Of a stretch of 64,000 nucleotides of DNA, positions 24,001-45,000 are shown in pieces. Position numbers and translations under genes: made by a program. Positions within the stretch are counted from its first letter, which is position 1. Every line of letters starts with the position of its first letter. The notes beneath the pieces were generated by a model. It did no database searches. It had not been told where the DNA came from and saw nothing but the letters and a program-made list of their open reading frames with translations. Source of the DNA: Bugula neritina (taxonomy: Eukaryota > Animalia > Bryozoa); contig OZ037766.1 in the NCBI GenBank assembly GCA_964035545.1, positions 1,116,001 to 1,180,000 of the forward strand. Direction: 5' to 3'.

Positions 24001-27000
24001 TTGATAATATATGTAATACTCATTGTACATCAGCATGTATTACTCATTGTACATCGGCATGTATTACTCATTGTACAACAGTATGTATTACTCATTGTAC
24101 AACAGTATGTATTACTCATTGTACAACAGTATGTACTACCTGAACAAGTTTTGTGGTCGGACAGATAGAGATATTCAGGACATTCACAGTAATGTGATCC
24201 TTCAGTATTTACACAGTAATGTGTACATCCTCCATTATCCTCTACACATTCGTTCAGTGCATCGCATGGCTTTTACGACTGTCAGGGTCGATCCTCATTT
24301 TGCCATTTCGCGATATTAGCCGCAATAAACAATATATTTTCGTAAGATAGCATCGACTGTCTAGGGCGCGACTGTTGACGAATCAGAACAAAGAGAGCAC
24401 ATGAGTGCTGTAAACATGTACGTGTTGTTATGGTTACTAATGATGATCTGCTACGTAATTTTTGTAGTAGACAACTCTCACAGAAATCATTAATTTGTCT
24501 TTTCCTTATTTAGCTAACAACTTTTGTCTAGAAAAAAGAGAAGGCAAGGTGGCTCAAGCAATGCTGTATTTTTTTAGAATGTTTTAGCTTAAATTCTGTT
24601 TGGTTTATCCTATTAGAATGTTACCTGCTGCAGCATCAACACTATCATTGCAAAACTATATCTACTTATAACAAAATCTTGATGCACATAGCAAAATTAT
24701 CAACTTTATTGTGGCGGATGTGCAAGAGTTTGGAGTCATCTCATCAATTACACATAGCAACAGAAGAACACAATATAGAAATAACAGAAAGCCAAAGACA
24801 GTATACCTTTATTTTTAACCAAAAAAGAATTTTGTTAAACATTATATTGTTTAGTTCACCATAAAAAAACTGATTTTACAAGTGGTTACATCTTTTCCGA
24901 AAATAAAGGTGCCATGAAGCAGCCGAAAATGAAGTCGTCCGCTCACCAGACACCTAAAAAATAATTATGCAACATGATATTTTTAAAATTAAACACAGAT
25001 ATGCAAAAGTCATCACCTACATAATTTTTTATAAATTTAACAAGCTTGTTTAGTGAAAGTGTATAATACAAACACTAATGTTGATAGCGAAAATGCCATG
25101 TTCATGCAAGATAGTAAATCAATATAAATAAGAAGTCATATCATATTTATGTTATATATGTATTCAATTCTGGTTTATGCTTTATGCCTTCAACTATGAG
25201 TGCACAACCACTAATCCTATTTCTACCAACACCATCTCTACCACTAACAGTACTAACGTCAGAACCAAAAGCAACTTCACCACTACTACTAATAATGTTA
25301 TTATTTTATTATTATTACTTCTACTACTACTACTACTACTGCTGCTACTGCTGCTGCTACTACTTCTACTACTGCTACTGCTACTACTACTGCTACTGCT
25401 GCTGCTACTACTTCTACTACTGCTACTACTACTGCTACTGCTGCGGCTGCTACTGCTGCTGCTACTACTTCTACTACTGCTACTGCTACTACTACTACTG
25501 CTGCTACTACTTCTACTACTGCTACTGCTACTACTACTGCTACTGCTGCTACTGCTGCTGCTACTACTTCTACTACTACTACTACTGCTGCTACTGCTGC
25601 TGCTACTACTTCTACTACTGCTACTACTACTGCTGCTGCTGCTACTACTTCTACTACTGCTACTGCTACTACTACTACTGCTGCTACTACTTCTACTTCT
25701 ACTACTACTACTACTACTACTACTACTACTACTGCTGCTACTACTGCTGCTGCTATTACTTTTACCACTACCGCCGCTGCCACTGCCGCCACCACCACCA
25801 CCACTACTAATATTGTTTCTACTACAAGTACTGTAAATCTCACCAGCAGCAAGTTATATTGGAAACTGTTTGCTCATTTTATCATTGTATTAGTGCAATA
25901 ACAAAATGTTTATATTTTAATATAGTCAAACCTTTTAAAAAACTAGGCTGCTACTTATGAACTGAGAAGTTGTGCTACCCACCTTGATATGCACTCAGCT
26001 CCAACACCAAGCAGGTGGTTATGATGCTTCTCCACAATGGCCAGGCCATCCAGCTGTCCGATTGTATGCATCTACGTAAAAACTATTGGCATATGGTGCA
26101 AGAAATGATTAAAAACCAGATAGGTGTGCTAGAATTTATACAGCATAATATAGAGTAAGGTAAAAGAGAACAGACCGTCAAGTGGTACAGCATAGAAACA
26201 ATTACTAGCTATTATATGCTTTGTAGAAGTTGGCAAATTGTAGCCCACTAGATATGAACTTTGGTTAGCATTTTATTTTGGCTTTCAGCAACTGCTTTAA
26301 TCAATAATCTTGGTAAAACCAATATGTTTACAAATTAACACCTCCACTAGATAGGTATACAGGTCAAAATATTCCAATTGGTGACATACTAAAAGAAAAT
26401 GTATATTTATTCATCTTTGAAAGATTGCTAATAATTTATAAAACAGCGTCGAAATCACTAAAGTAACAGCGCAAATAAGTTTATTAAACAGCATTATAGG
26501 ATTGCCTATTACTAGTTTCATGATTTCTATTATTTTACTGGTTTCAAACATAATATAGGCTGAAAAAGCAATATTAGTTCTCTCACTTTTGCTAACTACA
26601 TTGCTTGGAAGGCCATCATAATTAGATCAGATCAAACAAATGTGTTGACAGGTAGACTGGAACAGGCCTAAAATTTGCAAGGTATAATTTAAATGTATCT
26701 GGCCTGAAATTGCTGAAACTGACAATACAATAATATGAGAAACGAGCAGGGTTTTTTATTAAAGCTAGCAAAAATAATTCCTCTACATATAATTAACATA
26801 CAGTTCATACATATAATATATTACTATGTCCAGGCAGCAGTGCTTGTTCTAGTCAAAAGAAAACTGATTTAATGGCTGATTTTAATGGCCATCAAGAAAT
26901 TTATGGCGCACAGTGGCATTGTCATATTTTTAATATTCAAAATTACAGTTCTAATCTATCAATCATTTTATCAATACTACTATACTATGATCTACTCCTG

Positions 27001-42000: not shown

Positions 42001-45000
42001 TCGTAAAGTTATATGTTTGTTAAATTATTTTGCATTTGTTTATATTCTACAAATAATTTCTACATCTTTTATATAATTGCGATATTTCTTTTCGTCTACT
42101 ACATGCAGCTCATTATATGCATATGTAGGCTATATACAATGCAGCATAAAATTTTATAATACTAAGCAAAAAATGCTATGAAAATAAAAACATTTTACAA
42201 AATGATATTATATTATGGTAGCAATAAAGTTGTAATAGACTATTATTTAATGAGAAGACAATTATGTCTTTATAATGAAGATTGATAAATTTATAATATG
42301 AGCTGAAATTGAGTGAGAAGACAATTATGCTTTCAAAATACTTACAAGACTAAATTCTTATCTAATAGCTACAGTAATTAATATCCTTTGTTTAGAACAA
42401 AGTCTAAAAGGAGCGGATTTAAATAAAAATTCAGACCTGCATTTGTTAAAGCTTTTCAATCAAAATTATTACATTATATTATTCTTTCTCATAACTCCTA
42501 GCTTCTAAAACCTTTTGCATGAAAAAATTGATTTAGAATGCAAATTACTGCTAGAAATTGCCGTGTTTTAATGTCAACCCTAACTGTATCCACCACTTGT
42601 TTTAGTTGTTACGATCGTTGCCTAACCAATGAAGTTGAACTGGTTGTACCTCCAGCCAATCAATTACTTATTTCAATTGCGCCTCATTAGGCTAGGATCG
42701 TTGACGAAATCTATATAATGTAATACAAATCCCATTACCACTGATTGACCCGAAGTTCTCTACGACTTCTATAGTGGTATAGGATAATAGATATACTGCA
42801 TTCGTTCACATCTGCTCGAAAATAAAGTTCGGTTTAAATTCAACAATATTGAATGGTTTTTTTGTTATAGAAGAAATATCCACATATCCGATGTAATACA
42901 TTTAAAAAAAAAATTTTGATGCTTTGTACACAAGACAACCATATTTCTAATGAGATGGTCAATAAGGATGTGTTTTTATGATTTATATAAAACCTGGAGT
43001 TTGTATTACAACTAACTTGTACACAAGACAACCATATTTCTAATGAGATGGTCAATAAGGATGTGTTTTTATGATTTATATAAAACCTGGAGTTTGTATT
43101 ACAACTAACTAGTGAAGTAGCTGATATAGTTATTCTATTTTGACGGGAATATATTGAAAACTTCAAATTCAAAGCATTGCAGCTTAAGATAACTGCGTTT
43201 TGTTTTATTTCGTAGATTATTAGCAAGTGTAGTAAGAAGTCACTGTATAAATATAGAATACATGCAGATACTGTTTTTTTCGCGCATATCCACTGTTCCT
43301 AACTGCAAATAGCCACTGTCCCTAACTGCAAATAGCCACTGTCCCTAACTGCAAATAGCCACTGTCCCTAACTGCAAATAGCCACTGTCCCTAACTGCAA
43401 ATAGCCACTGTTCCTAACTGCAAATAGCCACTGTCCCTAACTGCAAATAGCCACTGTTCCTAACTGCAAATAGCCACTGTTCCTAACTGCAAATAGCCAC
43501 TGTCCCTAACTGCAGCTAACACCAAAAAAGAAACAAATGTTTGTGATAAAAAAATTGCTAGCAGGTATAACACTTATAAGAAAGCTAAAGGCAACCATTA
43601 ACAAACAGAACTATATATATAACTAGATGCGAATACATACCTATACAGTCTCTGTTGTTATCAGAAAGATGGAAATGGTCTGGACATTCACAATAGAAAG
43701 AACCAGGAGTGTTGACACAGGTATGACTACATCCACCATTGTCTGTTTGACATTCATTTATATCTGTATACAAAATGAAGTATATAGGTATAAAACTGTT
43801 AATATAGGAAATTTCTATATGCAGTAATCTGGCTCAATATTCAATCGCTGGATATTTTCCGATTGGCTGATTAGGTAGCGTCTCTGATTGGCTTAATAAT
43901 TAAAAATGCACGAGATCACTTTAATGTCCTTGACTGTCATGGTGCACACGTGCTCTTCAACTCGCACTCTTAGCAATAATCATAATGACAAGATCATTGC
44001 AACCTCTACAACATCTTACTAGTATATACTCAATTGATAGTGCTCTTGAAGCAATAAACAATTTAAAGAAATTCAAAGTTGAACCAAGAATGTTTGCACT
44101 GATGGCCACTTTAAGCGTATGCAGCGATTAGTTCAGCCAAAAAATACCACATGCGTTTAGAATTAGCCAAACAACCAATCAGAAAATATTCAGCAAAGTA
44201 AATTTCGGGTCAGATTACTGCATATAGAACTAACCATTAATATATCCTGCTTACCAGTGCTGATGAAATAGTATACCTTATAATATTACATAAAGTTGTT
44301 TTGAAATTTGAAATAATTGGCCAGTGAAATAAGATAGAATTTAAATCAGTCAACCTTTCAGTAAAACTAACAAACAAATAAAAATTAGTTTTATTAAAAG
44401 TAACTTCTCATCCTCAGTAAATTTTGAGGAAACAATTGGCAAATATGGCAATTAAGCAGCTTGTAGCTACTTTCCATTTCTAGTTGGTGTCTAATAAAAC
44501 AATGGATAAGTAAAACAAAGTAGAATATTCAACTAAGACTTACCAACCATTTATTGAGTGAAACAACAAAGCCTTTATGTTTTTACTGAAGAAAAAAAAA
44601 ACTGTAATAAAATAGCCATGGATTTAGATATTGAGATTTGAGAAGATGGTCTTTACTTACTAGAATGTCAAACTAGGTGATACAAATACTTTTGTTTGAC
44701 ATGTATATATATTGCGAAGAACTCCACGTGTATAGAATTGCAGCTTAATATTATTCTGGGTTACTTCCCTTCCTATTTAACAACAATTATTTTTAGAAGC
44801 TGCTACATACCTATACAGTCTCTGTTGTTATCAGAAAAATAGAAATGTTCAGGACAGTCACAATAGAAAGAACCAATAGTGTTGATACAGGTATGGCTAC
44901 ATCCACCATTGTCTGTTTGACATTCATCAACATCAGCTGCAAAATTTAATAATTTTTAGCTTTTAGTTAACTTGGAAAAGCATAAAAATCACAACGATTC

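What the first reader, a model, noticed from the sequence alone, without database searches (positions are those of the whole stretch)
24255..42798. Hidden 18.5-kb cargo-carrying KDZ/Zisupton-like DNA transposon splitting an EGF exon
Seen: an EGF exon ([12 protein letters not shown]..) is cut in two 18.5 kb apart, with a perfect 8-bp TSD CATTCGTT, very short imperfect CAG..CTG termini and a subterminal GGGTCRATC inverted pair; the paralog gives the empty site. Inside are two divergently oriented spliced gene remnants (KDZ-like transposase on +, unknown on -) separated by a low-complexity spacer. None of this is apparent from the ORF track. Established: Zisupton makes 8-bp TSDs and has intron-containing genes, and fungal KDZ elements are associated with accessory genes such as TET/JBP. 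Inference: a possibly undescribed two-gene invertebrate KDZ family whose termini can be defined exactly here.
Basis: partly seen in the sequence, partly recalled or inferred. Interest (0 to 1): 0.9.

Follow-up and report, generated by a model that had tools for sequence, protein, structure and literature searches.

The report
Giant KDZ transposon splitting an exon
An 18.5-kb jumping gene with a long-dead cutting enzyme has recently landed in an exon of a bryozoan gene; it is one of about 32 young copies, most likely moved by five intact relatives that also carry a chromatin-reader-like gene.

Summary
Confirmed. Window 24255-42798 is a KDZ (Zisupton-like) DNA transposon that splits a 120-bp EGF exon. 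I read both junctions of 31 copies (17-32 kb): 26 have perfect 8-bp duplications, each a different sequence. Ends are CAG..CTG with almost no inverted repeat. Public contigs from three runs show the empty site. The window copy (17 near-identical siblings) cannot move itself: transposase exons 2-8 and 14-16 are missing and the rest is broken. Its arms are 93-99% identical to five 26-32-kb copies with a stop-free 16-exon CxC3-KDZ transposase, but its transposase core is only about 70% identical, so it is a mosaic. Those five copies also carry a convergent zinc-ribbon/chromodomain gene, which the window copy lacks; this scan had already noted that partner on other DNA of this genome. The host is of the Bugula neritina complex. 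Giant cargo-carrying KDZ elements with dead transposases are known from algae and fungi, so this is a well-bounded animal variant, not a new class.

The parts
24255..42798 (+). Whole non-autonomous KDZ element (subtype A, 18,544 bp)
   Evidence: Paired ends genome-wide; 17 copies share this interior at 97.6-99.5% where read in full
24247..24254 (+). Left copy of the 8-bp target-site duplication
42799..42806 (+). Right copy of the 8-bp target-site duplication
24255..24293 (+). Left terminus CAGTGCATC with subterminal GGGTCGATC at 24285-24293
   Evidence: same terminus in a second B. neritina assembly
42743..42798 (-). Right terminus CAGTATATC with subterminal GGGTCAATC at 42743-42751
24140..24254 (-). 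3' part of the split host EGF exon
42799..42811 (-). 5' part of the split host EGF exon (acceptor, 5 bases, duplication)
24255..32151 (+). Left arm, 93-99% identical to the autonomous subtype C outside simple repeats, except 27491-29334 which C lacks; no intact gene found
25316..25771 (+). TAC/TGC microsatellite that gives the spurious long ORFs
27670..28175 (+). Nested decayed LINE 3' fragment, fixed in 26 copies (subtypes A and B)
   Evidence: Dispersed 65-75% relatives; Atlas reverse-transcriptase-fragment hit 0.96; no Pfam hit
29700..31280 (.). Low-complexity AT-rich spacer
32421..32583 (+). Remnant of transposase exon 1
   Evidence: 72% to subtype C exon 1, score 103 against shuffle maximum 41
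33001..33629 (.). Nested high-copy 620-bp repeat, lying where exons 2-8 are deleted
33755..34635 (+). Remnants of KDZ core exons 9-11 with stops, a 54-bp loss, and the second predicted catalytic Asp read as Asn
35341..35446 (+). Remnant of transposase exon 13
36809..37291 (.). Nested MITE-like insert with 155-bp inverted arms (93.5%)
41205..42798 (+). Right arm, 92-94% identical to subtype C
59909..60028 (-). Intact paralogous EGF exon in the tandem gene duplicate (comparison site, not part of the element)

Best explanation
The 18.5-kb block is a recently inserted, non-autonomous KDZ cut-and-paste DNA transposon. Shown: defined ends, 8-bp duplications at 26 of 31 sites, a dead and partly deleted transposase, near-identical siblings, and an empty allele in public data. 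Inferred: the transposase of the five intact 26-32-kb copies recognises the shared ends (CAG terminus plus subterminal motifs rather than a long inverted repeat), excises the unit and inserts it with an 8-base stagger at AT-rich sites without strict sequence preference. Also inferred: the window copy is a recombinant, in which an old dead core from a sister lineage sits between arms of the currently active lineage. The insertion breaks one in-frame EGF exon of an otherwise open EGF-ZP-fibrinogen gene that has a tandem paralog, so exon skipping or the paralog could buffer it.
For: Paired ends and TSDs. Five copies with Pfam KDZ and CxC3 hits, 100% identical stop-free catalytic exons and a 16-exon, 733-codon open frame. 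Purifying selection against independent samples: 53 third-position against 13 and 11 first/second-position changes, introns 10.5% against exons 7.0%. Identity steps from 93-99% in the arms to 71-75% in the core. Window exons 10-11 differ from C mainly at third positions (23/48 and 21/39 against 7-8). The same deleted core occurs at four loci about 80% away whose ends were not found by the terminal searches. Empty-site contigs in three runs continue into this locus's right flank, not the paralog's.
Against: No RNA run was on record, so expression of the partner is unshown. No contig bridging the filled junction was among the pieces listed. Five copies have imperfect or mismatched duplications. 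An unrelated intronless KDZ family is in the same genome.
Confidence: 0.85

Rival explanations
1. The window copy is simply a subtype C element that decayed in place, with no recombination.
For: Same layout and transposase position as C; arms 93-99% identical.
Against: Neutral decay would be even along the element, but the core is about 70% while non-coding arms are 93-99% identical. Core differences are biased to third codon positions, and the same deleted core exists at four other loci.
Confidence: 0.06
2. The ends are mobilised by a different enzyme, such as a hAT transposase (also 8-bp TSD, CA..TG ends) or the intronless KDZ family, and the spliced KDZ genes are passengers or a nested element.
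For: 8-bp TSDs and CA..TG ends are not unique to KDZ; intronless KDZ ORFs lie on C4, C5 and C8.
Against: Three diverged KDZ transposase versions (A, B, C) sit at the same place and orientation inside the same ends. The C version is intact and under selection. No long TIR as usual for hAT, and no separate boundary around the KDZ gene was seen.
Confidence: 0.05
3. The window copy carries a real, divergently transcribed second gene in its left arm, now decayed beyond recognition.
For: A few exon-like stretches with GT/AG ends at 24880-27700 and 31640-32400; one 76% relative of 25951-26845 exists at C7:11.94 Mb.
Against: No Pfam hit; the only protein hit is the same element in another assembly; no excess of open exons; LINE and microsatellite explain part of the region; DUF3987 search blank (low power on short exons). 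This rival does not exclude the best explanation.
Confidence: 0.25
4. Assembly artefact or segmental duplication.
For: The host region is itself a tandem duplicate.
Against: 31 different insertion sites with sharp identical ends and site-specific duplications.
Confidence: 0.02

Closest known systems
Zisupton (Bohne et al. 2012, as summarised in PMC12730594, PMC9297572, PMC11343200)
   Same: 8-bp TSD, multi-exon KDZ transposase, animal host, recent activity.
   Different: Almost no TIR here (7 of 9 bases); 17-32 kb; modelled transposase about 730 aa against up to 1300-1400 aa; CxC3, with no SWIM hit in the exons scanned; separate chromodomain gene in the intact copies.
Giant KDZ elements of Ectocarpus and Chlamydomonas (PMC12477816)
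   Same: 10-30 kb, nested TEs fixed across copies, pseudogenised transposase moved in trans, accessory genes.
   Different: Animal host; three swappable cores between shared arms; accessory gene is a zinc-ribbon/chromodomain protein.
Kyakuja (PMC12730594)
   Same: CA..TG termini without TIRs.
   Different: Kyakuja makes 7-bp TSDs, is fungal and often carries TET/JBP; here 8 bp and no TET/JBP seen.
Cryptococcus KDZ1-3 and KDZx1 (PMC11343200)
   Same: 8-bp TSD, CxC plus KDZ transposase, extra ORFs; KDZx1 has no detectable TIR.
   Different: 6-11 kb, fungal, CxC1 or CxC4, cargo without known domains.

Membership tests
KDZ group | KDZ transposase domain (PF18758) | tested here: met
   Three consecutive exons of subtype C hit profile positions 55-106, 119-165 and 165-205; window remnants are homologous to them
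KDZ group | N-terminal CxC zinc-chelating domain | tested here: met
   CxC3, E 2.3e-5, 24.6 bits on one exon (cut-off 26.6) in subtype C; deleted in the window copy
KDZ group | Intact D-D-E triad (autonomy of the window copy) | tested here: not met
   First Asp exon deleted, second reads Asn, stops present. All three motifs are present in subtype C; residue roles assigned from family knowledge
Zisupton | 8-bp target-site duplication | tested here: met
   26 of 31 perfect; definition in PMC12730594
Zisupton | Terminal inverted repeats | tested here: inconclusive
   Only 7 of 9 terminal bases plus one 9-bp subterminal motif at unequal distances; no longer inverted match in 500 bp
Zisupton | Multi-exon transposase gene | tested here: met
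   16 exons, GT-AG plus one GC donor conserved in subtypes B and C; no RNA confirmation
Zisupton | SWIM zinc finger with CxC4 (canonical architecture per PMC11343200) | tested here: inconclusive
   Seven of 16 exons scanned singly gave CxC3 and no SWIM; the rest were not scanned
Zisupton | Phylogenetic placement within Zisupton rather than Kyakuja or Dileera | not tested
   Needs the joined protein and reference sequences; the joined step was left out
Kyakuja | 7-bp TSD | tested here: not met
   8 bp at 26 sites; one site could be 7 bp or a homopolymer slip
Kyakuja | CA..TG termini without TIRs | tested here: met
Chromodomain (partner gene, subtype C only) | Chromo fold motif with three aromatic cage positions | tested here: inconclusive
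   Pfam Chromo below cut-off (E 0.0017-0.045), HP1 chain 6mha_A E 0.0013; W, W and Y align to the HP1 cage positions (cage positions from my own knowledge); binding untested

The most novel reading that the evidence does not exclude
An active animal KDZ lineage that needs almost no terminal inverted repeat, exchanges whole 9-10-kb cores between shared arms, and whose intact copies encode a separate chromodomain protein that steers insertion or shields the element from silencing for the whole family, including dead copies like this one.
Probability: 0.2. Interest if true: 0.75.

Novelty: new variant of a known kind. Interest (0 to 1): 0.5.

Why it matters
KDZ transposons are among the least characterised DNA transposons in animals. 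This family gives exact ends from 31 sites, a polymorphic insertion into a host exon, and five intact candidate driver copies, so end recognition without long inverted repeats and the role of the chromodomain cargo can be tested directly. It also shows that 17-32-kb cargo-type DNA transposons, described mainly from algae and fungi, were recently moving in an animal (about 0.6 Mb, 0.3% of this genome).

Tried and rejected
TET/JBP, Ulp1 or DUF3987 cargo in the window's left arm: no Pfam hit on pieces, own-genome DUF3987 search blank (low power). The long ORFs at 25177-25852 are a microsatellite. P0001, top hit, is a bacterial Ig-like repeat protein and was rejected as chance. The B. neritina chromodomain homologs P0004 and P0005 have no KDZ exons within the fetched flanks, so the gene family also lives outside these elements. 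The paralog as source of the empty-site contigs was rejected. No Rfam or tRNA hit in the element. A first splice-site test had no power; the open-exon version worked on a held-out control. Iyer 2014 was not held and Bohne 2012 was seen only through citing papers.

Full report
Observation. The window is G000:C2:1116001-1180000 of a 216-Mb assembly. CATTCGTT lies at 24247-24254 and 42799-42806. Two such 8-mers in 64 kb are not unusual by themselves (33 of 100 shuffles). However, removing 24255-42806 restores an AG acceptor and an open 120-bp, phase 1-1 EGF exon on the minus strand, matching the intact paralogous exon near 59909-60028. The host gene has EGF, ZP-N and fibrinogen-C exons, its other compared exons are open, and it has a tandem duplicate in the window. 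The ends read CAGTGCATC and CAGTATATC; GGGTCRATC occurs once per strand, 31 and 48 bases in, and there is no longer inverted repeat.

Family. The terminal 300 bp of each end hit 35 and 40 places, which pair up at 17-32 kb. I read both junctions of 31 copies: 26 have a perfect 8-bp duplication, one has 7 of 8, one is a 7-bp duplication or homopolymer slip, and three do not match. All 31 sites differ and are AT-rich without a fixed motif. Three interiors share the ends. A (17 copies, this window's type) is 97.6-99.5% identical where read in full. B (about 9 copies, four read in full) shares only the left 7 kb and has a 78-81% right end. C (5 copies, 26-32 kb, two read in full) carries the Pfam KDZ hits.

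The intact partner. In C the transposase is a 16-exon model of at least 733 codons with no stop; one intron has a GC donor that is conserved in B. Single exons hit CxC3 and three consecutive stretches of KDZ. Two catalytic exons are 100% identical and stop-free in all five copies. Independent metagenome contigs hold the same gene at 87-94% DNA identity, with changes concentrated at third codon positions. Facing it is a second stop-free gene of at least seven GT-AG exons: zinc ribbons, an unknown domain, a Ser/Thr repeat and a chromodomain-like end. One independent contig spans the transposase and reaches the last chromodomain exon. Its only full-length homologs found are two Bugula neritina proteins whose loci show no transposase, so it may be a captured host gene; the direction is not shown. 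I reached this before reading the scan's earlier notes, which report the same 26-kb partner from other windows.

The window copy. It keeps remnants of exons 1, 9-11 and 13 (12 weakly), with stops and a 54-bp loss. It lacks exons 2-8 (CxC3 and the first predicted catalytic Asp) and 14-16, and has no trace of the chromodomain gene. Its arms are 93-99% identical to C but its core only 71-75%. Exons 10-11 differ from C mostly at third positions, so the core comes from a sister transposase that diverged while functional and then died. Four further loci carry the same core with the same exon 2-8 deletion at about 80% identity and were not among the end hits. B keeps exons 1-6 of a third version. The simplest reading is recombination of old cores into current arms; this step is inferred. 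Nested passengers fixed across copies are a LINE 3' fragment, a 620-bp repeat and a MITE-like insert.

The supposed second gene. I found no support for an intact gene on the minus strand of the left arm: no Pfam hit, a single protein hit that is the same element in another assembly, and 1 open splice-bounded exon against 2.4 expected, where a held-out real gene gave 7 against 2.0. A very decayed gene is not excluded.

Recency and host. Logan contigs from three runs leave the window at 24256 and continue with this locus's right-flank sequence, that is, the empty site; the paralog's flank does not match. In the run closest to the assembly, summed contig depth over the element end is roughly 30 times the flank, but only a few-fold in three more diverged runs. 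The tool warns that depth is not copy number, so this is only consistent with a lineage-specific burst. No contig bridging the filled junction was among those listed, and no RNA run was on record. A 90-94% copy with the same left terminus lies in the B. neritina assembly GCA_010799875.2, which places the host in or next to that species complex.

Comparison. Zisupton makes 8-bp TSDs and has TIRs; Kyakuja has CA..TG ends, no TIRs and 7-bp TSDs (PMC12730594). Zisupton is multi-exonic and widespread in invertebrates (PMC9297572). Giant KDZ elements of 10-30 kb with fixed nested TEs, accessory genes and pseudogenised transposases moved in trans are described in Ectocarpus (PMC12477816), and a TIR-less 8-bp-TSD KDZ in Cryptococcus (PMC11343200). 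So the element is a KDZ member that works like Zisupton; its sub-lineage was not tested. Paper searches surfaced no separate chromodomain gene in a KDZ element from titles, abstracts and the passages I read, but the two founding papers could not be read, and from memory chromatin-binding domains are reported fused to some KDZ transposases.

Limits. Spliced models were searched exon by exon; the joined-protein searches, fold and tree were left out. 

Verdict. A real, exactly bounded, recently inserted non-autonomous giant KDZ transposon; new variant of a known kind; interest 0.5.

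Noticed in passing
window 9140-17027: Young Gypsy LTR retrotransposon (LTRs 96.9% identical, TG..CA, 4-bp GTAT duplication, gag/protease/RT/integrase on the minus strand) with an extra 273-aa ORF at 9796-10617 that has no Pfam hit.
   Followed up: partly
window 17300-24256 and 43017-48262 against 53012-63314: Tandem duplicate of an EGF-ZP-fibrinogen gene at 70-90% identity.
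   Followed up: partly
L057 (G000:C8:6905244-6915000): A B-type right end whose inner 9 kb holds B-box and TRIM coiled-coil exons; possible captured TRIM gene or a truncated copy next to a host gene; left end not found.
   Followed up: partly
G000:C4:11721561, C4:11728328, C5:10985459, C8:6196648: A separate KDZ family with an intronless open frame of at least 451 aa.
   Followed up: no
G000:C3:16.20 Mb, C7:14.06 Mb, C6:3.74 Mb, C8:2.23 Mb: Four loci with the window's dead core at about 80% identity and apparently other ends.
   Followed up: no
G000:C3:18.36, 18.51 and 21.05 Mb; C4:20.72-20.73 Mb; C298:0.108 Mb: Exon-only homologs (72-90%) of the zinc-ribbon/chromodomain gene outside the elements.
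   Followed up: partly
G000:C3:20018715-20022852: Four tandem copies of the transposase exon that carries the first catalytic motif, 51-57% identical to subtype C.
   Followed up: no
G000:C7:12121255-12147360 and C6:2324864-2344268: Two full-length copies with unrelated flanks instead of a TSD; possible recombinants between two insertions.
   Followed up: no
window 42815-42817: The acceptor tract of the filled allele differs at three bases from the empty alleles in public contigs, so the insertion sits on a distinct haplotype.
   Followed up: no
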